A DNA stretch of 63,940 nt, the filler included, from Octopus bimaculoides (lineage: Eukaryota), in the NCBI RefSeq assembly GCF_001194135.2. It is 8 parts of 7 records of this genome, joined end to end, with 100 filler letters (N's around TTAATTAATTAA, not from the genome) between each part and the next. Parts side by side here need not be neighbours in the genome. Positions count along the whole stretch, not along the records: positions 50,975 to 63,940 come from NC_069007.1; 7 more parts are not named here. The stretch is one strand, 5' to 3'. Below, piece after piece: positions 50,975 to 63,940 of the stretch; the first letter of the stretch is position 1; the number at the start of each line of letters is the position of its first letter. The translations under genes were made by a program, and so were the position numbers. Below the pieces are notes generated by a model that did not search any database, was not told the DNA's origin, and saw nothing but the letters and a program-made list of their open reading frames with translations.

Positions 50975-51010
<36 letters not shown>

Positions 51011-51014
<4 letters not shown>

Positions 51015-51185
51015 CAAATTTACAGAAAAACAAAAGACAAAGACAGGTGTTGGAACAACAAGCAGGTGTATTAGTTTGACACTCAGGAAAAAATAGAAAA
51101 GTCTTTTACGTTTCGAGCCTATGCTCTTCAATAGAAATGAATAAGAGGAAAAATGGAGAGAGAAGAAAAAAAAAGAGAAAAAATC
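51011..51185 (-). mobile_element. Second copy of the Penelope-like repeat with variant hammerhead (51102-51137)
   Basis: TTT-CTATTGA-A-GAGCatagGCTC-GAAA-CG-TA-AAAGA; flanks are homologous to 22477-22660. Confidence 0.5.
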
Positions 51186-51864
51186 TGTGTAGAGTTCAGC
51201 AGTCCAACATGGTGAGGTATTGGCCTAGGGCTATAATAGAAGAAACTTAACCAAGTTGCTGTGCAATGGGACTGAACCTAAAACTACATGGCTCTCAAGA
51301 TGAGATTCTTAACTACACAGCAACACATATCTTTCCATCTGTGAACGTTCCATTTGTTTTAGGCTTTTCTCTCTGTGTATGTCTCTGTGTGTGTGCATGT
51401 GTGTATGTGTTTGTGTGTGTGTGCGTGTGTGTGTGTGTGTGTTCATGCATGTGTATGTGTGTGTTTTCTTTCTGTCCAAAATATTCACCCTTTACACTTA
51501 CACTAATGTATCCTGGCTTTAAACAACCATTGACTATTGACAAATCTATTAAGATGAACATTTTGTTGTGATATTTTATTAAACGTTCATATCGATTCTG
51601 TTGGTTCTTTATACAACCAAAATATATTGTTTGGAAGTAGGCAATTATGGCTGTCAAAAGTAATTACCTGTAGCGTGGAAATAGAACTGAATAGTTCAGA
51701 TAACAGTGTGTGTATCATTTGATGTATAATGTATACACATATGTAGAATAGCTGTAGCTGTAGGATAAATATACACATGCAAAACAGCATTAGATTAAAA
51801 TACCTTCTCTTTAGAGACATTGTGTGTTAAAAACACAAGATATGTTCTGAATGACATCAGCAGA

Positions 51865-51911
51865 CCATCAGACACAGATGTTTTGGGTTAATTTTGTCTT
51901 GTCAGTGATGG
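51865..51911 (-). ncRNA. Type I hammerhead ribozyme, array copy 1
   Basis: CCATCA-CTGACAA-GACAAAATTAACCC-AAAA-CAtctgTG-TC-TGATGG (G8A, G12A). Confidence 0.7.
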
Positions 51912-52102
51912 AAACACCCATTCTTTTGGAACTGGCTAGGAACTTTTATTCCTATATAGATCTTACCAAATTTGCTGGTTTGTGCAGAAGCTGGCCAGGC
52001 TTCATTGAATAAATACACTTGAAACAGCTTTAGGTTAAAATAACTTCTCTGTAGAGACTTGGTGTGTTAAAAACACAAGATGTTCTAAAGTGTATCAGTA
52101 GA

Positions 52103-52150
52103 CCATCAGACACTGCTGTTTCAGGTTTATTTTTACTGCATCAGTGATGG
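52103..52150 (-). ncRNA. Type I hammerhead ribozyme, array copy 2
   Basis: CCATCA-CTGATGC-AGtaaaaataaacCT-GAAA-CAgcagTG-TC-TGATGG (only A9C deviates). Confidence 0.78.
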
Positions 52151-52358
52151 ACACACTTGGTTATTTTGAGCTAACCTGGAACTTTTATTCCTATATAGAA
52201 ATTAACAGAAATTAACATGAAATATTTGTAGGTTCGTGTGAAAGCTGGTCGAACTTTAATCAATATACACATGCATAACTTCATTAAATGAAACATAACT
52301 TCTCTTTAGAGACTTCACATGCTAACAAAACCAAAATGCTCTGAATGATATCAGCAGA

Positions 52359-52404
52359 CCATCAGACACCACTGTTTTAGTGTAATTTTACTTCATCAGA
52401 ATGG
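52359..52404 (-). ncRNA. Type I hammerhead ribozyme, array copy 3
   Basis: CCATT-CTGATGA-AGTaaaattacACT-AAAA-CAgtggTG-TC-TGATGG (G12A). Confidence 0.72.
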
Positions 52405-54067
52405 ACAATCCTATACATTTTGAACTAGATAAGAACTTTTATTCATAAAAAGAAATCAAGAAATCAAACATTTACTGGTTTGTGCAGAGGTTGGTCAGGC
52501 TTCAGTTAAATAAATATACACACTTAAAACAGTATTTTCTCTATTCCTCATATTTACTAAGTTCATAACCATGTGATTTTGGGTTTCAATCCCACTGTGT
52601 GATACCCAGGGCAAGTATCTTTTATATATACATGTGTGTACGTGTTTGTGTGTGTGTGTAGCTGTATTGATGAATGTGTGTCTTTGTGTCTGTGCTTGTC
52701 CCAACCATCACTTGACAACTGATGTTGGTGTGTTAATGTCCCTATAAGTGGAGAGGGGTTTCTACATTGAAGATTAGAACTACATGACACTGCTTGTATG
52801 ATGGTTACACTCGTTTACAACTATCATTCAATGTCAGGACAAGGAGACACTAACACACACACCCATGCATATACACACATGCATACACACATGCACAAAC
52901 ACACACACATGTACATCCATGCACACATATATAATGATATAGTTTGGGCAGCTCAGCAAATCAGTCTTAACAAAAAATACAAAGCACAGGGATCGATTTG
53001 CTCAATTAAAATGCTTCAGCGCAGTGATCCAGCATGGCCACAGCCGAATGAATGAAACTAGCAAAAAAATAGAAGAATCAAGGGAAATGTATTTTTTAGA
53101 GTACATTTTTGGATAACTTATGAGATTCTGCATAATACCAAAAGTCAACAGCAAAATGTATTTCTGAAAAATCCAGAATCGCATTACGTTTTTGTGAAGA
53201 TGCAATGTGAGAAGATGATTCTAAATTTAACTCTCCCAAGAATGAGACTTATCTTAAAGAAGAAAGAGTTTAGCTGTGTTTTCTAAATTCTTTTTTTTTT
53301 TCTTTTTCACAGTTTTAAAACTATCAACTACTAAACAACTTTAAAACCACATGATAAGTTTATAACGATCAGCCTATACACACACATACTCATGCATNNN
53401 NNNNNNNNNNNNNNNNNNNNNNNNNNNNNNNNNNNNNNNNNNNNNNNNNNNNNNNNNNNNNNNNNNNNNNNNNNNNNNNNNNNNNNNNNNNNNNNNNNNN
53501 NNNNNNNNNNNNNNNNNNNNNNNNNNNNNNNNNNNNNNNNNNNNNNNNNNNNNNNNNNNNNNNNNNNNNNNNNNNNNNNNNNNNNNNNNNNNNNNNNNNN
53601 NNNNNNNNNNNNNNNNNNNNNNNNNNNNNNNNNNNNNNNNNNNNNNNNNNNNNNNNNNNNNNNNNNNNNNNNNNNNNNNNNNNNNNNNNNNNNNNNNNNN
53701 NNNNNNNNNNNNNNNNNNNNNNNNNNNNNNNNNNNNNNNNNNNNNNNNNNNNNNNNNNNNNNNNNNNNNNNNNNNNNNNNNNNNNNNNNNNNNNNNNNNN
53801 NNNNNNNNNNNNNNNNNNNNNNNNNNNNNNNNNNNNNNNNNNNNNNNNNNNNNNNNNNNNNNNNNNNNNNNNNNNNNNNNNNNNNNNNNNNNNNNNNNNN
53901 NNNNNNNNNNNNNNNNNNNNNNNNNNNNNNNNNNNNNNNNNNNNNNNNNNNNNNNNNNNNNNNNNNNNNNNNNNNNNNNNNNNNNNNNNNNNNNNNNNTA
54001 TATATATATATAGATAGATAGATAGATAGATAGATAGGAAGATAGATAGATAGATATAGATAGAGAT

Positions 54068-54124
<57 letters not shown>

Positions 54125-54555
54125 CAAACAGATATACATAAAAATACATATATATATAGATTGACTGATAGACAGATAGATACACATTCAGAAACAAACA
54201 GGCAGACAGGCACACAGTGAGTGATACATTGCTGTACAAAGTTTTATTACTGTACTTTGGAAATAAATCTTAGGATTGATGCCATGCCAAAACCCGATTA
54301 TTCTCTCTGGGTTACAAAAGGGAAACTTGTTTGCTTGCGCTGTCAATCAATCTGTCCGACTCCAAACAAGCTTATACCTACATACATACATACATACATA
54401 CATGCATGCATATATATATATGCAAGTATGCATGAGCATATATGAGTGTGCACATGCATGTGTGTAGACATGTATATATATATATATATATATATATANN
54501 NNNNNNNNNNNNNNNNNNNNNNNNNNNNNNNNNNNNNNNNNNNNNNNNNNNNNNN

Positions 54556-54592
<37 letters not shown>

Positions 54593-54645
54593 CATACATA
54601 TATATACATGCATTTACATACATATATATGTGTGTATATTTATAT

Positions 54646-55284
54646 AGATTTAGATGAGATTTAGATAGATTTAGATTTAGATGAGATGCAGTTTGGGTTC
54701 GTGCCAGGTAAAAGCACTACTGATGCCTTATTTCTAGTGAGACAGTTGCAGGAGAAATACCTAGCTAAGGATAAACCTCTGTACCTGGCTTTCGTTGACA
54801 TGGAGAAAGCCTTTGACAGGGTCNNNNNNNNNNNNNNNNNNNNNNNNNNNNNNNNNNNNNNNNNNNNNNNNNNNNNNNNNNNNNNNNNNNNNNNNNNNNN
54901 NNNNNNNNNNNNNNNNNNNNNNNNNNNNNNNNNNNNNNNNNNNNNNNNNNNNNNNNNNNNNNNNNNNNNNNNNNNNNNNNNNNNNNNNNNNNNNNNNNNN
55001 NNNNNNNNNNNNNNNNNNNNNNNNNNNNNNNNNNNNNNNNNNNNNNNNNNNNNNNNNNNNNNNNNNNAAAAGACACCATTTCGAGCGTGGCCGTTTTCGT
55101 GCGGGTGACACGTAAAAGCACCCACTACACTCTCTGAGTGGTTGGCGTTAGGAAGGGCATCCAGCTGTAGAAACTCTGCCAAATCAGACTGGAGCCTGGT
55201 GTTGCCATCCGGTTTCACCAGTCCTCAGTCAAATCGTCCAACCCATGCTAGCATGGAAAGCGGACGTTAAACGATGATGATGAT
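54646..55284 (+). mobile_element. 5'-truncated RTE-type LINE (RT fragment, gap, 3' tail with (GAT)n)
   Basis: MQFGFVPGKSTTDALFLVRQLQEKYLAKDKPLYLAFVDMEKAFDRV is a classic RTE RT segment. The tail ends gcggacgttaaacgatgatgatgat. Confidence 0.9.
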
Positions 55285-55381
55285 ATATATATATCTACAT
55301 GCATATAAATATAGATAAATGAATACTTATACATACATACAAATACATATATGTATATATATGCATGCATATGTGTATAAA

Positions 55382-55413
<32 letters not shown>

Positions 55414-55425
55414 CATATCTCTTTC

Positions 55426-55476
<51 letters not shown>

Positions 55477-56329
55477 ATATATGTATATATATGTATGTAT
55501 GTATGTTCATACACACAGGCATACGAAGGGGAAGAGAGGTCTATATAACACAGGCAAGTACACAAAACACATCACCATTGCTGTCGATCAAGGAATTAAA
55601 GGAGAGAGAGAGAGAGACAGACAGAGAGAAAGAGAGAGAGAGAGAGGAAGTGTAATGTTTCTATGATTGAGCTGTGTGGAAAGAGGAATCTCCTGTTTCC
55701 ACAATGGTACAATGGGGAAGTAATAAGCATTTACATTACATTGATTGATGAAGATGACATCAGATAGGAATTGGATAAGGAGTTCTCTAATGTTTAAAAA
55801 TCAATAACTTTGTCTTTGTATTGATTTTTTTTTTATATTCTCCTTATTTGCTGAATTTAGGGAAACGGTTTTGATTCTTTTGTCGTTTATTATGCTGTGA
55901 TGTTTCTTCTTTCTCGTTTTCTCTGGTTTTGGGGTTTCTACTTAAGTTACGATTTCTTTGATTGATGGTGGTAGTGGTGGTGGTGGTTAAGAAGTTACTC
56001 CCCAACCACATTGTTTCAAGTTCAGCTCCCACTGCGTAGCACCTTGGGAAATTATCTCCTACTATAGTGCCAAAACCCTGAAAGGTTTTGAATGGCTTTG
56101 TTTGGCAGAAATTGAAGGAAGCCTAACATATGTATATGTGTATATATATTCATATCTATGTATCTATCTATCTATCTACCCTAGTTTCACTCACTGCAAT
56201 GAAAAATAACATTTGCCCAAGATACCACACCCTGAGATTGAACTCACAGCTTCATGGTTACGAAACAAACTTCTTCACCACTCTGCCATACATTATATTG
56301 TATGATTTTTGCTGTTTCACCTTTACTCT

Positions 56330-56737
56330 TTTTACTCTTTACTCTTTTACTTGTTTCAGTCATTTGACTGTGGCCATGCTGGAGCACTGCCTTTAGTCGA
56401 GCAAATCGACCCCAGGACTTAGTCTTTGTAAGCCTAGTACTTATTCTATCCGTCTCTTTTGCCGAACCGCTAAGTTACGGGGACGTAAACACATCAGCAT
56501 CGGTTGTCAAGCGATGTTGGGAGGGACAAACACAGAAACATATACACACACATACATATATATATATACATATATACGACGGGCTTCTTTCAGTTTCCGT
56601 CTACCAAATCTACTCACAAGGCTTTGGTCGGCCCGAGGCTATAGTAGAAGACACTTGCCCAAGGTGCCATGCAGTGGGACTGAACCTGGAACAATGTGGT
56701 TGGTAAGCAAGCTACTTACCACACAGCCACTCCTGCA
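56330..56737 (-). mobile_element. Full-length SINE family A
   Basis: tRNA-like head, core, internal (TA/CA) tract and tail are all present and near-identical to 14220-14550. Confidence 0.92.
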
Positions 56738-57121
56738 ACTTCCTGCGATTGTTTATTTATTTGTTTATTTATTGAACTGTTAACTACTATTAACAGATAA
56801 CTAAACGCAATAAAATTTTCCCAACCAATACACAAAGGTAAAAGACATGAAATTTCAATACCTATTACACTATTAAACATCAGCAAACACAAATCCAATT
56901 AATGTTTTGTCATTAAATTATCACTAATTGGTTTATAATGATCTGTACATTTTACACTGCTACATATGCAAACCAGTTTCCTGTTTTGTCATAACTAGCT
57001 TGTAACTTATCAGAATAAATTAGATGCAGACACGGCTGTGTGGTTAAGATGCTTGCTTTGTAACCATGTAGTTTTAGGTTCAGTCCCACGGTGCAACAAC
57101 TTGACAAGTCCCCTGCTATTA

Positions 57122-57426
57122 TTGTTGGTACTCCGTCGCTTATGACATCGAGGGTTCCAGTTGATCAGATCAACAGAACAGCCTGCTCGTGAAATTAACA
57201 TAAAAGTGGCTGAGCACTCCACAGACACGTGTACCCTTAACGTAGTTCTCAGGGATATTCAGCATGACACAGTGTGACAAGGCTGACCCTTTGAAATACA
57301 GGCACAACAGAAACAGGAAGAAAGAGTGAGAGAAAGTTGTGGTGGAAGAGTACAGCAGGGTTCGCCAGCATCCCCTGCCGGAGCCTCGTGGAGCTTTAGG
57401 TGTTTTCGCTCAATAAACACTCACAA
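57122..57426 (-). mobile_element. SINE family B (head in gap)
   Basis: Near-identical to the body of 42314-42703. Confidence 0.88.
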
Positions 57427-57725
57427 NNNNNNNNNNNNNNNNNNNNNNNNNNNNNNNNNNNNNNNNNNNNNNNNNNNNNNNNNNNNNNNNNNNNNNNNNN
57501 NNNNNNNNNNNNNNNNNNNNNNNNNNNNNNNNNNNNNNNNNNNNNNNNNNNNNNNNNNNNNNNNNNNNNNNNNNNNNNNNNNNNNNNNNNNNNNNNNNNN
57601 NNNNNNNNNNNNNNNNNNNNNTATACTGCCAGCTTAACCAATGTCATGTGAGTAGTAGCTGGAAACTATGAAGATATACATACATATAGGCAAAGGAGTG
57701 ACTGTGTGGTAAGAAGCTTGCTTCC

Positions 57726-59234
57726 GGTTACTGCGCATGCATTGATTCAGTTGCTGGTTTGGTTTTTTTTTGAGAGTCGGACAGGAGTTTTGTGCTGCTT
57801 CGCAGCGGTTTAGAGAAAATGTATTCAGACTTTAGAGGGTCTGAATTGTTTTCAGCAGAAGAGGAGCTGGTGAAGGTGGTGAGAAGAATAGATGGAATAT
57901 TAGAGAGAACAAGAAGTTTTTCTGAGGCGGCGGAGGTGAAGAGAAAGGATGTAGACCTGGCTTGACTAAAGGAATAAGGGAAAATGATGCAGAGGGTGGG
58001 CGGCGACGTGAAGTTGTTGCTGCCTAAAAGAATCATGGAGCAAATGGAGAGGAAACTATCACCTATAGGGTGCACTTGCTGAAGAACAAAAAGGCTGAAC
58101 AGGTGGAAGTGAAAATAATAGAAAAAGCGCTAAGAAAACGGTCGAACCAAATAATGTATATAACCAAAGGATGTAAATATGGGACAGAGGTCATCCAGTT
58201 TGGGACAGAGGTCATCCAGTTTGGGACAGAGGTCATCCAGTTTAGAACAGTGGAGGAGGTGAGGAGGCTGGCGAGGACAGAAGAGGTGGTGCTTCTGCCC
58301 ACATATCTTGGAAGAAAGACTTCCAAGGTAAGGGTGGAAGCAATCCCACCTGATATAGAAGTTAGAAGTGGCTTGGGTGGAGGCAGCCGTCCTTGTTGGA
58401 AGTGAGGAGGAGGTGGCTGTCCCACAAGCCACGGAAATGGAAGAAGGAGGATGGAGAGGGAAATCACTGGATCTCATCCTGCAGGCAGAGGAGAAGCAGT
58501 TAGAGAGTCTGGTGGAGACGGTGACGTTGGGAGAAATTGTGTTCAGAGAGTGGGTGGATGGCAGGGTCCCACGTTGCTTTAAATGTGGCCAAAAGGGCCA
58601 CATTAGAGCACACTGCCCTCTACAGAAGAAAAGAGTAGATGAAACAGCAGACGAACCAGTTGAGGAGATGGAGGAGAAAACAGAGGAAGAAGAGATGGAG
58701 GAAAGGAGGAAGAATGGATAGTAACAGAGAGTAGAAGAAGAGGAAGAAAAGAAAGAACACTGAGTGTGATGTGGTACACCAGTCCAACTCAATCCCACCC
58801 AAGACCACTCAGACCCACCCTCCCCATACAGACACCAGACCCACCCACACCCTTTTCCCACAAGAAATAAAAGGAAAAGAGCAGACACCATAGAATTTAG
58901 AAGACCCCCTCCCCCAGTGAAAAAGGTTACGAAAGAGTGTTGTCATTGAGCGATAGCGAGAGCGGAAATAGAAGGACTAGACCAGAGACTAAAGAGGAAT
59001 TAGGACTGAGAGGCAGCAAGTGGTGTTACTCAGTGTAGGGTGAGTAGTACACTCTTCATATTTTCATTTTCAGAAAGCATTCATGTTATCATAACCTTAA
59101 TTTATTTTCTCATGTTCATTTTCGCGTCACTCATAGTATCATATTTTATTTTTACATATTTTTCATTGTTATATGTCCCAACATGTTTTGTAGTGTCCCC
59201 TCTATGTTATGCTTTATGGCAAAATATTGAAATA
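57726..59234 (+). mobile_element. Complete 1509-bp ORF1(gag)-only LINE derivative with 15-bp TSD
   Basis: TSD AAGAAGCTTGCTTCC lies at 57711-57725 and 59235-59249. The insert has a short 5' UTR, ORF1 with a CCHC knuckle and an AT-rich 3' UTR ending in an AATAAA-like signal; no endonuclease or RT is visible. Confidence 0.85.
57819..58721 (+). pseudogene. Decayed gag-like ORF1 with CCHC zinc knuckle
   Basis: MYSDFRGSELF..; IMYITKGCKYGTEVIQF(x3)RTVEEV..LLPTYLGRKTSKVRVEAIPPDIE..; GRVPRCFKCGQKGHIRAHCP (CX2CX4HX4C). It carries stops and frameshifts. Confidence 0.85.
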
Positions 59235-59350
59235 AAGAAGCTTGCTTCCCAACCACATAGTCCCTTGGGCAAGTGTCTTCTACTATAGCCTCAGGCTGAC
59301 CAAAGCATTGTGAGTGGATTTGGTAGACAGAAACTGAAAGAAGCCCGTCG

Positions 59351-59409
<59 letters not shown>

Positions 59410-59687
59410 TTATTTGNNNNNNNNNNNNNNNNNNNNNNNNNNNNNNNNNNNNNNNNNNNNNNNNNNNNNNNNNNNNNNNNNNNNNNNNNNNNNNNNNNNN
59501 NNNNNNNNNNNNNNNNNNNNNNNNNNNNNNNNNNNNNNNNNNNNNNNNNNNNNNNNNNNNNNNNNNNNNNNNNNNNNNNNNNNNNNNNNNNNNNNNNNNN
59601 NNNNNNNNNNNNNNNNNNNNNNNNNNNNNNNNNNNNNNNNNNNNNNNNNNNNNNNNNNNNNNNNNNNNNNNNNNNNNNNNNNNNNAT

Positions 59688-59885
59688 CCCATCATCATCA
59701 TCATTACCATCATTTAACGTCTATTTTCTATGCTGGCATAGGCTGGACAGTTTGACCAGAGCTGGCCAGCCAGAGAACTGCACCAGGTTCCAGTCTAATT
59801 TGGCTAGATTTTACAGCTCAAGGCCCTTCCTAATGCCTACCACTTTTCAGTGTCTGTTGGGTGTTTTTAACATGGCACCAAAACA
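59688..59885 (-). mobile_element. Old copy of the RTE-type 3' tail
   Basis: (CAT)n-tttaacgtc..tatgctggcatagg..gcccttcctaatgcc matches 15601-15889. Another degraded copy lies at ~61436-61590. Confidence 0.6.
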
Positions 59886-59904
59886 AGCACATTTGATATA
59901 CATA

Positions 59905-60015
59905 AACAGAGTGGCTGTGTGGTAAGAAGCTTGCTTCCCAACCACATGGTTTCAGGTTCAGTCTCACTATGTGGTATTTCGGCAAGTGTCTTCTATAACC
60001 TCGGGCCGACCAAAG
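59905..60015 (+). mobile_element. SINE family A, partial
   Basis: gtggctgtgtggtaagaagcttgcttcccaaccacatgg..ggcaagtgtcttctataacctcgggccgaccaaag. Confidence 0.8.
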
Positions 60016-60309
60016 TATGTATGTATGTGTGAGTGTGTCTGTGTATGTGTGCGTGAATCCATATGTGTGTATGTGTGTGTAGTGATGGTGGGGATAATGA
60101 TGATGATGATGATTACACTAATGCACTTCAACAAATATGAATCTAATTAATGCTTCATCAGTAACCAATCACTAATGAGTTTAAAATGATCTGTATATTT
60201 TACACTCCCATGTGTACAGATCATTTTCTGCTTTGTCATAAATAATGTATAACCTGTTAGTATTAGACACATACATAGCTGTTTGGTAAGAAGCTTTCTT
60301 TGTTTCTAA

Positions 60310-60500
60310 AGGTGGCGAGCTGGCAGAAGCGTTAGCACACCAGGCGAAATGCTTAGCAGTATTTCGTCTGTCGCTATGTTCTGAGTTCAAATTCCACTAA
60401 GGTTGACTTTGCCTTTTATCCATTCGGGATCGATTAAATAAGTACCATTTACGCACTGGGGTGGATATAATCGACTTAATTCGTTTGTCTGTCCTTAGAG
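60310..60500 (+). mobile_element. SINE family C
   Basis: ggtggcgagctggcagaagcgttagcac..ctgagttcaaattccactaaggttgactttgcc. Confidence 0.85.
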
Positions 60501-61380
60501 GAGTTAGATGAAGAGGGAAGGAGAGTTGAGCCCATGTGGTGCAAAGGAGCAAAGAGAGAAGATTAATTCTTGTTCATGACAAAGATGGGAATCCAGATGG
60601 CCCCTGTGCAAACATAATTCTAACACAGACAGGTGTTGTAAAGAATGACCAGTAGAGCAGAAATGGCATGAGACTGGGGTGTAAGCTGCCGATGTCTCGG
60701 AGGTGTTCCGCAAACCAGTCAGCCAAGCAGCGTCCCGTTTGACTGATGTACAGAGAAGGACAGAGAGAGCCAGAGATACAATATATATATGTATGTATGG
60801 ATGGATATATGTATGTGTATATATATNNNNNNNNNNNNNNNNNNNNNNNNNNNNNNNNNNNNNNNNNNNNNNNNNNNNNNNNNNNNNNNNNNNNNNNNNN
60901 NNNNNNNNNNNNNNNNNNNNNNNNNNNNNNNNNNNNNNNNNNNNNNNNNNNNNNNNNNNNNNNNNNNNNNNNNNNNNNNNNNNNNNNNNNNNNNNNNNNN
61001 NNNNNNNNNNNNNNNNNNNNNNNNNNNNNNNNNNNNNNNNNNNNNNNNNNNNNNNNNNNNNNNNNNNNNNNNNNNNNNNNNNNNNNNNNNNNNNNNNNNN
61101 NNNNNNNNNNNNNNNNNNNNNNNNNNNNNNNNNNNNNNNNNNNNNNNNNNNNNNNNNNNNNNNNNNNNNNNNNNNNNNNNNNNNNNNNNNNNNNNNNNNN
61201 NNNNNNNNNNNNNNNNNNNNNNNNNNNNNNNNNNNNNNNNNNNNNNNNNNNNNNNNNNNNNNNNNNNNNNNNNNNNNNNNNNNNNNNNNNNNNNNNNNNN
61301 NNNNNNNNNNNNNNNNNNNNNNNNNNNNNNNNNNNNNNNNNNNNNNNNNNNNNNNNNNNNNNNNNNNNNNNNNNNNNNNN

Positions 61381-61431
<51 letters not shown>

Positions 61432-62114
61432 GGAGCTGAAAGCCAGACAGATGCAACAGGCTCCAATTGTCTGTTTTGGCATAGTTTCTACAGAGGGATG
61501 CCCTTCCTAGTGCCAGTCACTTTACAGGGTGTACTAGGGGCTTTTTACGTGGCACCAGCATGGGTGCTCCTTGCATGGCACTGACGCAGTTAAATTTTAT
61601 GTAATACTGGCATGAGTGCTTTTCCCTCAGCACTGGCTTGGGTGCATTTTATGCAGCAGTAGTGCAGGTGCTTTTTTATATGGCATATATATGTATGTAT
61701 GTGTGTATATGTATGTATGTGTCCGTGTGTATTTTGTTCTATTTGTGCTCTGTATAATTTTTCAGCTCCAAGCAGAAATGTTGCTGACATCTCCCCTGAT
61801 AATTCTCCTGCCAACAAATCAGCCACTTGCTTCACACATTTGAAGATATATGAAATTAGAGATTGCATACTTGAAAATCCGCAAAGGTTTAGCAAGAAGA
61901 CAAGTATCCAGCTGTATAATAATACCTCAATAAAATATTCATCTAATGCATGGCAGCATACAAAAACAGACGTAAAAACAAATATACTTTCAGTTTGTGC
62001 AATTCATCCTGATGCTATTTTTAAATAAAGGGGCCCCAATCTTTATATAGCTTAAGGCCTCATGGACTTTAAATCTGGCACTGTATTTTTATGTTTTGCT
62101 TAGTATTTTAACTA

Positions 62115-62501
62115 GTGAAGTCGCAATGGCCCAGTGGTTAGGGCAGCGGACTCGCGGTCATAGGATCGCAGTTTCGATTCCCAGACCGGGCGTTGTGAGC
62201 GTTTATTGAGCGAAAACACCTAAAGCTCCACGAGGCTCCGGCAGAGGATGGTGGCGAACCCTGCTGTACTCTTTCACCACAACTTTCTCTTACTCTTTCT
62301 TCTTGTTTCTGTTGTGCCTGTAATTCAAAGGGTCAGCCTTGTCACATTCTGTGTCACGCTTAATATCCCCCGAGAACTACGTTAAGGGTACACGTGTCTG
62401 TGGAGTGCTCAGCCACTTGCACGTTAATTTCACGAGCAGGTTGTTCCATTGATTGGATCAACTGGAACCCTCGACGTCGTAAGCGACGGAGTGCCAACAA
62501 C
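62115..62501 (+). mobile_element. Full-length SINE family B with 13-bp TSD
   Basis: TSD AGTATTTTAACTA at 62102-62114 and 62502-62514; tRNA-like head tggcccagtggttagggc..gtttcgattccc; (CAA) tail. Confidence 0.93.
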
Positions 62502-63940
62502 AGTATTTTAACTACTCTTTTATTATCGCCCCCAAAAAGATTCAAGGTAAAGCTAACTTTAGCTGGATTTGAACTCAGAGTTTAGAAAGCTAGAAAAAAT
62601 TATAGTAAATACATTCTTTCCAATATTTTAATGTCTCTATCAGATTGGCTAACCCAGAGGTTAAGCAACAAAAACAGCAACAAATACATCTGGGTTGTTT
62701 GTTGTTGTTTCTTAGTTACCTTTCACCCAAAATGTCTAACATTAAATTTATCTAAAGAAAATATTTGTAATTCTCATAATAAAAGGAAAACTTTGATTGA
62801 AATAAAAACGAAGCAATGATACATTTTTCAAAACCACAATGAAAGAAAACATTATAAACACAAACACATACAAAAATACACGTGCAAAAACACAGAAAAG
62901 ACAGGAAAAAACACAAAAAAGACAGAAAGAAATAGAAAAGGAGAAATCAGTTTTCTGGGTAAATCAAATTAATTGTTGCAAGCTATTATGCAATACTACT
63001 TATTTGTTAATACTGTATAGCATTTAATATAATGTAATTATCATCAAAGTATGGAATGGTGAAACTAATAGTCGCAATGTTTAGATTGTATCTCTATAAA
63101 AGTCACGTCGAAGATAAAGGTAAAAGAGAAGACAAAGAAAAATACATAAATACAAGAGATGAAGAGATATGAAACATCATGTCTTAGTTTCTATTGTCAT
63201 TGCTTGTTCTTGACCATCATTGTTGTTGATGTTGCTGTAATTGTTGTTGTTGTTGTTGGTACTGATTTTTAAAGTTGTTGTTCATAATTCTCTTGTTGCT
63301 CTTATTGTCGAGATAATGCCCTCTCTCGACCTTCGCTTTTGTCGCAAATACAAAAATGGTTATTGTTACGTTAAAATAAAATATTTAGAAGAAACTAAAA
63401 AGGAAATCTCATAAATAAAAACTCTAAATGAAATATAAAAACACCAAAAAGAAAACCTACAAGAAATCATTATTTGTATTATTATTGTTCTTGTTGTGAA
63501 GTTGTTGTTGTTAGGGTTATTGTGATCATTTCACTTGTCCTTGTTGTTGGTGCTGTTACTATTGTTGTTGTTATTAACAAATATTCTTGAATACCACGGG
63601 TCCAAAAGTTCAACAGAATTTGAGTTAAAACAAAGTAGAAAATTAGAACTGTATATATACATAGACACTTACATACATACATATGTATATATGTATGTAT
63701 ACAAATGTGTGTATATGTGCATATCTATATATATATGTATATCTATATATATAAATATATATGCGCGTATATGTATGTGTGAGCATGTATATGCATATAC
63801 ATGTGTGTGTGTAGAGAGAGAGAGAGAGAATGAGATATATACATGCATGCATGCATACATACATATGTATATATGAATAACTGTGTGGGTGTTTGTATAT
63901 ATGTATTGTGTGTATGTGTGTATATATATATATATATATA

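What the first reader, a model, noticed from the sequence alone, without database searches (positions are those of the whole stretch)
51766..52532. Tandem ~250-bp repeat with one type I hammerhead ribozyme per unit: candidate cephalopod retrozyme (circRNA-producing element)
Seen: three diverged head-to-tail units. On the minus strand each reads stemI-CUGANGA-stemII-GAAA-stemIII-GUC-stemI'. The consensus is CCAUCA CUGAUGA AGU..ACY GAAA CA-NNNG-UG UC/UGAUGG, with a perfect 6-bp stem I and 3-bp stem III. Predicted cleavage sites are at + coordinates 51871, 52109 and 52365, giving monomers of 238 and 256 nt. Stem I appears to continue past a UCU(G/A)CUG bulge (GUGUGU/AUACAC in copy 2, GAAUG/CAUUC in copy 1), as in tertiary-stabilised type I ribozymes. 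Each copy has a different core lesion (G8A+G12A; A9C; G12A), so the consensus is canonical, and helix-forming segments stay conserved while spacers drift. Established: tandem 170-400 nt units with one type I hammerhead are the architecture of metazoan non-LTR retrozymes (newt satellite 2, schistosome Sm-alpha, cricket pDo500). Inference: this is a retrozyme family yielding self-cleaved monomers or circRNAs and spreading via a LINE/Penelope RT; these particular copies may be dead. I do not know whether this family has been described.
Basis: partly seen in the sequence, partly recalled or inferred. Interest (0 to 1): 0.9.

Follow-up and report, generated by a model that had tools for sequence, protein, structure and literature searches.

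The report
Decayed hammerhead-ribozyme tandem repeat (retrozyme relic)
A three-unit, roughly 250-bp tandem repeat carries one mutated hammerhead-ribozyme-like motif per unit and is most likely an old, dead copy of a known kind of animal mobile element (a "retrozyme"), so it is a modest addition rather than a surprise.

Summary
The tandem repeat is real. It has 3.1 head-to-tail units at window 51764-52544, spaced 238-256 bp, 71-75% identical to each other and 33% GC.

No copy has an intact catalytic core. Rfam reports no hammerhead family, even when only 71 nt are searched.

A covariance model built from four experimentally validated retrozyme hammerheads (coral, mussel, two axolotl) ranks the three copies as the top three hits in the 13-kb piece: 24.4, 16.0 and 12.0 bits, against 6.4 for the next hit. 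A descriptor null gives about 3e-5 per 250-nt unit for a consensus this good. The resemblance is therefore unlikely to be chance.

It becomes canonical only if CpG decay is assumed, which is plausible but not shown. Covariation, extra conservation of the motif and strong self-pairing are all absent.

No other family copies could be retrieved. A decayed Penelope-like endonuclease gene lies 8 kb away.

Verdict: a probable fossil non-LTR retrozyme, a new member of a known kind, inactive at this locus. The cephalopod origin is unverified.

The parts
51764..52544 (-). Tandem array of 3.1 units (period 238-256 bp, 33% GC), non-coding
   Evidence: the repeat finder families D1, D2, D4 and D6. nhmmer with the unit profile gives three full hits (E 1e-71 to 1e-74) plus a 36-nt partial. 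The longest ORF is 53 aa. GC content.
52294..52544 (-). Unit A (5'-most on the minus strand), contains motif copy 3
   Evidence: MAFFT alignment of the units
52040..52293 (-). Unit B, contains motif copy 2
51800..52039 (-). Unit C, contains motif copy 1
51764..51799 (-). Partial fourth unit (first ~36 nt of the unit phase)
   Evidence: Repeat family D4, fourth copy. nhmmer partial hit with E 0.0024.
52359..52404 (-). Hammerhead-like motif copy 3: CCAUU-CUGAUGA-AGU..ACU-AAAA-ACA GUGG UGU-C/UGAUGG. It has G12A and a 1-nt deletion in stem I. C17 is at 52365.
   Evidence: Retrozyme-hammerhead model R1: 12.0 bits, E 0.08 in 13 kb. Sequence.
52103..52150 (-). Hammerhead-like motif copy 2, the best copy: CCAUCA-CUGAUGC-AG..CU-GAAA-ACA GCAG UGU-C/UGAUGG. 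It has A9C and only 2 bp in helix II. C17 is at 52109.
   Evidence: Model R1: 24.4 bits, E 1.4e-5 in 13 kb. It is the only site in the piece that meets the descriptor with <=1 core and <=1 helix mismatch.
51865..51911 (-). Hammerhead-like motif copy 1: CCAUCA-CUGACAA-G..C-AAAA-ACA UCUG UGU-C/UGAUGG. It has G8A and G12A, and helix II is reduced to the G10.1-C11.1 pair. C17 is at 51871.
   Evidence: Model R1: 16.0 bits, E 0.005

Best explanation
This is an old, inactive insertion of a non-autonomous, hammerhead-bearing tandem-repeat retroelement, that is, a metazoan non-LTR retrozyme.

Inferred life cycle of the live family (not shown here):
1. The array is transcribed as an oligomer.
2. The type-I hammerhead in each unit cuts after GUC, releasing monomers of about 240-255 nt.
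3. A tRNA-ligase-type enzyme circularises the monomers.
4. A Penelope-like or LINE reverse transcriptase copies the circle by rolling circle into a tandem cDNA, which integrates.

At this locus a roughly 3.1-unit array inserted, or was amplified, once. Its units have since diverged neutrally by about 0.17-0.19 substitutions per site each (my estimate, from the ts/tv counts). That left 1-2 lesions in each catalytic core, so none of the three copies can be expected to cleave.

Shown here: the tandem structure, the significant hammerhead-like motif, the lesions, and a Penelope-like element relic in the same piece. Inferred: descent from an intact ribozyme, and every RNA-level and mobilisation step.
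For: - Tandem array: 3.1 units of 238-256 bp with star-like 71-75% identity. It is 33% GC and has no ORF above 53 aa.
- Model R1 was built from four experimentally validated retrozyme hammerheads (sequences from Supplementary Table 2 of PMC7229834; alignment). With filters off, it ranks the three motif copies first, second and third in the 13-kb piece at 24.4, 16.0 and 12.0 bits. The next hit scores 6.4 bits.
- R1 scored at most 8.2 bits on 9.7 kb of related-genome contigs. It scored at most 10.4 bits on unselected sites in 68 kb of other DNA.
- Sequences chosen only for the same stem I plus CUGAYGA plus GUC reach just 11-16 bits. Copy 2 therefore gains about 8-13 bits from the GAAA box and helices II and III.
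- Descriptor null on 50 Mb of Markov sequence: <=1 core mismatch with perfect helices occurs at 6e-8 per nt, or 3e-5 per 250-nt unit on both strands. Copy 2's class occurs at 5e-7 per nt.
- Stem III (ACA-tetraloop-UGU-C) and the contexts UCA|CUGAUGA and GUC|UG match the coral retrozyme hammerhead.
- The lesion load of 1-2 per 11 core positions equals what neutral decay predicts at the observed divergence.
- The splits at N7-G8 (UG, UG, CA) and at 11.1-G12 (UA, UG, CA) are the patterns expected from CpG decay of canonical CG dinucleotides. The piece has a CpG observed/expected ratio of 0.42. Copy 1 still keeps G10.1-C11.1.
- A frameshifted Penelope-like GIY-YIG endonuclease relic lies at 60507-60760 on the same strand. 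This fits the reported co-occurrence of retrozymes and Penelope-like elements (PMC7229834; bioRxiv 10.64898/2026.07.22.740005).
Against: - No copy has a complete core. The majority-rule consensus has A at G12.
- The CpG-decay rescue is not statistically established. There are 6 CpG-type double-transition sites against 4 GpC-type control sites. My rough likelihoods for the two ancestors differ only about two-fold.
- Helix II is only 2-3 bp and AU-rich. The hammerhead fold is far from the minimum free energy: about -5 against -13.6 kcal/mol for the consensus segment.
- Rfam hammerhead models report nothing.
- There is only one compensatory change, which is not significant.
- Monomer RNAs fold no better than shuffles, with z of -0.5 and -0.6. 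The circular consensus reaches z -1.8.
- No target-site duplication was found.
- No second locus of the family could be found in any accessible collection, so dispersal as a mobile family is unproven.
- Copies 1 and 3, taken alone, are at chance level.
- The three copies are not independent observations.
Confidence: 0.6

Rival explanations
1. It is an ordinary local tandem duplication (a minisatellite-like repeat) whose unit resembles a hammerhead by chance. Under this reading there was never a ribozyme.
For: - Every copy is catalytically defective, and the majority consensus lacks G12.
- Rfam finds no hammerhead.
- Part of the motif is low in information. CAUCA-C-UGAUG is a near-palindrome and UGAUG occurs three times, so stem I and CUGAUGA are not independent.
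- Sequences with only that part already score 11-16 bits.
- At genome scale, motifs of copy 2's quality are expected in the thousands: 5e-7 per nt times about 5e9 nt.
- There is no target-site duplication and no second locus.
Against: - The chance of such a motif in the consensus of a given 250-nt repeat is about 3e-5 to 2.5e-4.
- R1 gives E of about 1e-6 within the array region.
- The motif coincides with the unit size, low GC and stem III design typical of retrozymes.
- The array has 3.14 units rather than a whole number.
Confidence: 0.22
2. It is a relic of the hammerhead-bearing terminal repeat (pLTR) or tandem junction of an autonomous Penelope-like element, not a separate non-autonomous retrozyme family.
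For: - Penelope-like elements carry type-I hammerheads in their pLTRs and insert in tandem (PMC8557442).
- A 2026 preprint relates pLTRs to retrozymes.
- A Penelope-like endonuclease relic lies in the same piece on the same strand.
Against: - No reverse transcriptase or endonuclease coding sequence adjoins the array. The endonuclease relic is 8 kb away, across other repeats and gaps.
- Three complete short units of about 250 bp are not the usual pLTR-ORF-pLTR layout.
- Hammerheads of Penelope-like elements are described as minimal variants with a 1-bp helix III (PMC7229834). Here helix III is 3 bp with a tetraloop.
- Related endonuclease-bearing contigs show no such motif.
Confidence: 0.12
3. 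The motif is another structured RNA or DNA element, such as a C/D-box snoRNA-like unit or simply an imperfect hairpin, repeated in tandem.
For: - Copy 2 has a sub-threshold SNORD72 match of 24.3 bits through UGAUG...CUGA and a terminal stem.
- The minimum-free-energy folds of copies 1 and 2 are long imperfect hairpins with an A-rich loop.
Against: - The score is well below the gathering threshold of 43 bits, and 43 model positions are skipped.
- The boxes do not abut the terminal stem, and the motif is only about 47 nt long.
- UGAUGA and CUGA are automatic by-products of CUGAUGA and of a stem I complementary to it.
- Only copy 2 gives the hit.
Confidence: 0.03

Closest known systems
Metazoan non-LTR retrozymes (Cervera & de la Pena 2020, PMC7229834), e.g. 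coral Acropora millepora (220-240 bp), mussel Mytilus galloprovincialis (350-390 bp) and axolotl (330-350 bp)
   Same: - Head-to-tail repeats within the 150-450 bp range, low GC, non-coding, and no LTR, PBS or PPT.
- One type-I hammerhead-like motif per unit on one strand.
- A 6-bp stem I ending ...UCA|CUGAUGA.
- Cleavage context GUC|UG.
- Stem III is ACA-tetraloop-UGU, the same design as the coral ribozyme ACA-GUAC-UGU.
- Penelope-like elements are present in the same genome.
   Different: - All three cores are mutated.
- Helix II is only 2-3 bp with an A-U closing pair and an 8-11-nt A-rich loop. The validated ribozymes have 4 bp, closed by G-C in three of the four (Ax353 has a U-U mismatch there).
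- There is no sequence similarity outside the core.
- The RNA is not strongly self-paired.
- Expression, circular RNA and multi-locus dispersal are untested.
Classical satellite-type hammerheads: newt satellite 2, Schistosoma Sm-alpha, cave-cricket pDo500 (named in PMC7229834; details from general knowledge)
   Same: [quoted passage not shown] A short helix III may require dimeric action.
   Different: Those families are highly repeated and cleave in vitro. Here only one decayed three-unit array is in hand. Loop 3 is not palindromic, so a dimer mechanism is not indicated.
Minimal hammerheads in Penelope-like element pLTRs (PMC8557442; cited in PMC7229834)
   Same: Type-I topology and tandem insertion. 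A Penelope-like endonuclease relic lies nearby.
   Different: No adjoining ORF from a Penelope-like element. Helix III here is 3 bp with a tetraloop, not the minimal 1-bp form.
Rfam Hammerhead_1 (RF00163)
   Same: The order of elements is the same: stem I, CUGANGA, stem II, GAAA, stem III, UH, stem I'.
   Different: No match was listed at E<=10 even in a 71-nt search. The extant copies therefore do not qualify as members by the curated model.

Membership tests
Metazoan non-LTR retrozyme | Head-to-tail tandem repeat with a unit of about 150-450 bp, from dimers to multimers | tested here: met
   3.1 units with a period of 238-256 bp
Metazoan non-LTR retrozyme | A type-I hammerhead motif in each unit, all on the same strand | tested here: inconclusive
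   A model built from validated retrozyme hammerheads gives 24.4, 16.0 and 12.0 bits as the top three hits. However, each copy has 1-2 core lesions, and Rfam hammerhead models are silent.
Metazoan non-LTR retrozyme | [quoted passage not shown] This is the 'active retrozyme' criterion of bioRxiv 10.64898/2026.07.22.740005. | tested here: not met
   Copy 1 has G8A and G12A. Copy 2 has A9C. Copy 3 has G12A and a stem I deletion. TRF also fails to call the array.
Metazoan non-LTR retrozyme | Low GC (<45-50%), non-coding, no LTR/PBS/PPT | tested here: met
   GC is 33% and the longest ORF is 53 aa. No terminal repeats were seen beyond the units; PBS and PPT motifs were not searched for specifically. 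This feature discriminates weakly, because the whole piece is 37% GC.
Metazoan non-LTR retrozyme | Target-site duplication longer than 4 bp (only 'when present') | tested here: inconclusive
   The flanks share no k-mer other than the repeat itself. The array is old, so a duplication could have decayed.
Metazoan non-LTR retrozyme | Dispersed multi-copy family in the genome | not testable with these tools
   Only 11 kb of this genome is in hand. No copies were found in the metagenome, viral or prokaryote collections, or through ORF look-ups.
Metazoan non-LTR retrozyme | Expressed as self-cleaved linear and circular RNAs of about 170-400 nt | not testable with these tools
   No RNA data are available.
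Metazoan non-LTR retrozyme | Highly self-paired monomer or circular RNA | tested here: not met
   Extant monomers give z of -0.60 and -0.50 against shuffles. The circular majority consensus gives z -1.83.
Metazoan non-LTR retrozyme | Co-existence with Penelope-like elements in the same genome | tested here: met
   A frameshifted GIY-YIG endonuclease relic lies at 60507-60760 (-). It has 61 homologues with E<=1e-3, several of which match PF01541, and shows the YIGxTGR...EH...GHS...E..LIF...G(L/I)N motifs.
Hammerhead ribozyme type I (Rfam RF00163) | Match to the curated covariance model at or above the gathering score | tested here: not met
   No hammerhead family was listed at E<=10 in the 13-kb, 901-nt or 71-nt searches.
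Hammerhead ribozyme type I (Rfam RF00163) | Compensatory changes that support helices I-III | tested here: inconclusive
   Of 13 pairs, 10 never vary. There is one double change (A-U to G-C at 10.1/11.1), and 194 of 500 shuffles do as well. With only three related copies the test has little power.
C/D-box snoRNA (SNORD72-like) | Match at the gathering score, with C and D boxes abutting a terminal stem | tested here: not met
   The score is 24.3 bits against a gathering score of 43, in copy 2 only, with 43 model positions skipped.
Penelope-like element pLTR | Repeat flanking or adjoining an RT-EN ORF of a Penelope-like element | tested here: not met
   No such ORF lies next to the array. The nearest endonuclease relic is 8 kb away, beyond other repeats and N gaps.

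The most novel reading that the evidence does not exclude
The array is a fossil of a retrozyme family not yet described in the source lineage, probably a cephalopod. That family would still have intact, self-cleaving copies elsewhere in the genome that produce abundant circular RNAs of about 250 nt and are mobilised by Penelope-like elements.
Probability: 0.3. Interest if true: 0.45.

Novelty: new member of a known kind. Interest (0 to 1): 0.3.

Why it matters
If confirmed genome-wide, this would extend hammerhead retrozymes to another molluscan lineage. In the literature searched here, they have been shown in molluscs only for mussels. It would also point to a possible source of abundant small circular RNAs, and offer another case for testing the proposed link between retrozymes and Penelope-like elements.

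The locus itself is dead and has no evident function. Its practical value is as a seed sequence for a genome-wide search. It also shows that pipelines based on TRF plus a strict motif, or on Rfam, miss decayed arrays of this kind.

Tried and rejected
1. Rfam cmscan at E<=10 on 13 kb, 901 nt and 71 nt found no hammerhead. It returned only microsatellite-driven sub-threshold miRNA matches and a sub-threshold SNORD72 match.

2. Searches for other family copies all failed:
- Exact and degenerate patterns in JGI metagenomes gave 0 hits, then 11 GC-rich bacterial chance hits that lack GAAA.
- IMG/VR gave 1 hit and prokaryote genomes gave 25; by my estimate about 35 were expected by chance for the latter.
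- A protein search with the 53-aa ORF that spans the motif found nothing.

3. Attempts to identify the source organism all failed:
- An exact look-up of a 253-aa window ORF found nothing on record.
- The zinc-knuckle ORF has one unnamed metaclust homologue, which is not on any contig.
- The run accessions of related contigs, and k-mers from the SINE-like repeats, are not in the literature library.
- The cephalopod origin therefore rests only on my recollection of octopus-type SINE sequences.

4. A word-indexed protein search with the frameshift-joined endonuclease relic found nothing. The exhaustive search did find homologues.

5. Contigs carrying the closest endonuclease relatives (L038-L044) contain no hammerhead and no copy of the unit.

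6. The search for a target-site duplication or empty site was negative.

7. There is no similarity to the coral or mussel retrozyme sequences outside TCACTGATGA.

8. The idea that the upstream SINE-like element drives pol III transcription through the array was rejected on reading the sequence. The minus strand has many T4+ runs.
Full report
WHAT IS IN THE SEQUENCE

The usable piece is window 50975-63940, about 11 kb of bases plus six N gaps.

The repeat finder shows three head-to-tail copies of several blocks with start-to-start spacing of 238-256 bp between 51765 and 52544. A profile of the three units finds three full units and a 36-nt start of a fourth, and nothing else in the piece. The array is therefore about 3.1 units, at 51764-52544. 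Tandem Repeats Finder does not report it, because the units are only 71-75% identical.

The three pairwise identities are nearly equal (70.9%, 74.8% and 72.7%). This fits units that were identical when the array formed and have since diverged independently, at a Kimura distance of about 0.37 per pair (my calculation from the ts/tv counts).

The array is 33% GC, against 37% for the piece. Its longest ORF is 53 aa.

THE MOTIF

- Copy 2 (52150-52103): CCAUCA CUGAUGC AG-loop-CU GAAA CA GCAG UG U C / UGAUGG.
- Copy 3 (52404-52359): CCAUU CUGAUGA AGU-loop-ACU AAAA CA GUGG UG U C / UGAUGG.
- Copy 1 (51911-51865): CCAUCA CUGACAA G-loop-C AAAA CA UCUG UG U C / UGAUGG.

C17 falls at 52109, 52365 and 51871, giving monomers of 256 and 238 nt.

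Every copy is damaged at positions essential for hammerhead catalysis: A9C in copy 2, G12A plus a stem I deletion in copy 3, and G8A plus G12A in copy 1. Helix II is 3 bp at best, and complete only in copy 3. It closes with A-U in copies 2 and 3.

IS IT MORE THAN CHANCE?

Rfam gives no hammerhead family at E<=10 in the 13-kb piece, in 901 nt, or in 71 nt around the best copy. The only hit there is a sub-threshold SNORD72 match (24.3 bits against a gathering score of 43). It arises from UGAUG...CUGA, which any hammerhead with this stem I would contain.

I applied two independent tests.

First test: a type-I descriptor. It required a 6-bp stem I, a 3-bp stem II, a 2+1-bp stem III and 12 scored core positions. 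I ran it on 50 Mb of first-order Markov sequence with the composition of the piece.
- <=1 core mismatch with perfect helices (the class of the majority consensus) occurs at 6e-8 per nt. That is 3e-5 per 250-nt unit on both strands.
- <=1 core and <=1 helix mismatch (copy 2) occurs at 5e-7 per nt.
- <=2 and <=2 (copies 1 and 3) occurs at 8.7e-5 per nt, or about two per 22 kb. The piece does contain unrelated hits of that quality.
- Copies 1 and 3 are therefore chance-level on their own. Copy 2 and the consensus are not.

Second test: a covariance model (R1). I built it from the four hammerheads whose self-cleavage was shown experimentally in Cervera & de la Pena 2020: coral Amil224, mussel Mg353, and axolotl Ax353 and Ax330. 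The sequences come from Supplementary Table 2, with the alignment and the model.
- With filters off, the top three hits in the 13-kb piece are exactly the three copies: 24.4 bits (E 1.4e-5), 16.0 bits (E 0.005) and 12.0 bits (E 0.08). The next hit scores 6.4 bits.
- Control: 9.7 kb of contigs from a related genome give at most 8.2 bits.
- Control: 68 kb of unrelated DNA give at most 10.4 bits at unselected sites.
- Control: eleven bacterial sequences selected only for CCATCACTGAYGA...GTCTGATGG score 11-16 bits.
- Stem I plus the first box thus accounts for about half of copy 2's score. The GAAA box, stem II and stem III supply the rest.

The three copies share descent, so they count as one observation. 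At whole-genome scale a single 24-bit hit would not be significant. The weight comes from its coincidence with a retrozyme-sized tandem repeat.

THE ANCESTOR

There is a rescue. At N7-G8 the copies read UG, UG and CA. At 11.1-G12 they read UA, UG and CA. These are the products expected from decay of CG dinucleotides. The piece has a CpG observed/expected ratio of 0.42, with TG and CA in excess. Copy 1 still has G10.1-C11.1. The CpG-restored ancestor would read CUGACGA ... CGAAA, a fully canonical core.

The rescue is not established, however. CpG-type double-transition sites (6) are not clearly more frequent in the unit than GpC-type controls (4). My rough likelihoods for the two ancestors differ only about two-fold. 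This point stays open.

The lesion load of 1-2 per core equals the neutral expectation at the observed divergence. The data are therefore compatible with an ancestor that was intact when the array formed.

CONSERVATION, COVARIATION AND FOLDING

- Invariant columns make up 65% of the motif and 52% of the rest of the unit.
- The longest invariant run, GTGTCTGATGGTCT, covers stem III, the cleavage site and stem I. Its shuffle P is 0.018. A second 12-nt run lies outside the motif.
- Ten of 13 pairs never vary. There is one double change (A-U to G-C at 10.1/11.1), and 194 of 500 shuffles do as well.
- The hammerhead fold is not the minimum-free-energy fold: about -5 against -13.6 kcal/mol for the consensus segment.
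- Monomer RNAs fold no better than shuffles, with z of -0.6 and -0.5. The circular consensus reaches z -1.8.
- Nothing indicates selection on these copies.

CONTEXT

The piece is a mosaic of repeats.
- A reverse-transcriptase fragment lies at 54686-54823 and a zinc-knuckle ORF at 58368-58721.
- Several dispersed SINE-like copies and many microsatellites are present.
- At 60507-60760 on the minus strand there is a frameshifted relic of a GIY-YIG endonuclease of the Penelope-like type, with the motifs YI.QTGR...EHLRD...HF.S.GHS...E.ELIF...GLN.
- An exhaustive search with that relic gives 61 homologues. Several match PF01541, and the match usually lies at their C-terminus.
- Its nearest relatives sit on short Logan contigs of one run series (SRR1186938x-9x). 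These contigs contain no hammerhead and no copy of the unit.
- No target-site duplication flanks the array.
- I could not verify the organism. The SINE-like sequences look to me like octopus repeats, but that rests on recollection, not on a test.

RELATIVES

No other copy of the unit could be found in any collection open to me. Whether this is a dispersed family, which is the key property of a mobile element, remains untested.

INTERPRETATION

The best reading (confidence about 0.6) is a fossil array of a non-LTR retrozyme, the class defined by Cervera & de la Pena 2020. That class consists of low-GC tandem repeats of 150-450 bp with one type-I hammerhead per unit. [quoted passage not shown]

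The stem III design and the contexts around both boxes match validated retrozyme ribozymes, most closely that of the coral.

The rivals are:
- a chance resemblance in an ordinary tandem duplication (about 0.22);
- a relic of a Penelope-like element's pLTR (about 0.12);
- a different small RNA or a plain hairpin (about 0.03).

By the operational criteria for an active retrozyme (TRF-detectable, at least two consecutive complete hammerheads), this array fails. It is a relic by descent, not a working element.

NOVELTY AND SCORE

[quoted passage not shown] Full-text searches found no report of hammerhead retrozymes in cephalopods.

If real, this is a new member of a known kind, seen here only as a dead copy. 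Interest is 0.3.

Noticed in passing
window 60507-60760, minus strand: A frameshifted relic of a Penelope-like GIY-YIG endonuclease domain (YISQTGRCLADWFAEHLRDI / PVSCHFCSTGHS...EQELIFSL...GLN). A SINE-like sequence follows within about 25 nt of its stop codon. Pfam does not recognise the relic itself, but its homologues match PF01541.
   Followed up: yes
window 54686-54823, plus strand: A fragment of a reverse transcriptase (RVT_1, E 1.9e-5; FGFVPGKSTTDA...FVDMEKAFDRV). It is cut by a microsatellite on one side and by an N gap on the other.
   Followed up: partly
window 58368-58721, plus strand; 58180-58250: A gag-like ORF with a CCHC zinc knuckle (PF00098). Its only database homologue is one unnamed 197-aa metaclust protein (66% identity). 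Just upstream lies a 21-nt tandem repeat, TGGGACAGAGGTCATCCAGTT x3.4.
   Followed up: partly
window 62193-62500 vs 57122-57426; 59263-59399 vs 56526-56664; 59909-60015 vs 56622-56732; also 52550-52625 next to the array: Several dispersed SINE-like repeats occur in both orientations at 72-92% identity. One has a B-box-like GGATTGAAACC and lies directly 5' of the array on the minus strand. They resemble octopus SINEs from memory, but the taxon was not verified.
   Followed up: partly
window 60300-60480, minus strand; L038 1-90: A second SINE-like element (..GGTACTTATTTAATCGATCCCGAATGGATAAAAGGCAAAGTCAACC..GAATTTGAACTCAGAAC..) is also present on a Logan contig of run SRR11869394. This suggests the same or a closely related organism.
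   Followed up: partly
window 52866-52936, 54380-54461, 55353-55517, 63653-63923: TG/TA-rich microsatellites give many sub-threshold Rfam matches to mir-297, mir-3149 and mir-466 (up to 55 bits against a gathering score of 90). These are low-complexity artefacts, not miRNA genes.
   Followed up: no
window 51913-51924, 52152-52163, 52406-52417 (minus-strand read GAATAAAAGTTC): A second fully invariant 12-nt block lies outside the hammerhead-like motif in all three units. It forms a small hairpin (GGAAU AAAA GUUCC) in the predicted folds. Its significance is unknown.
   Followed up: no
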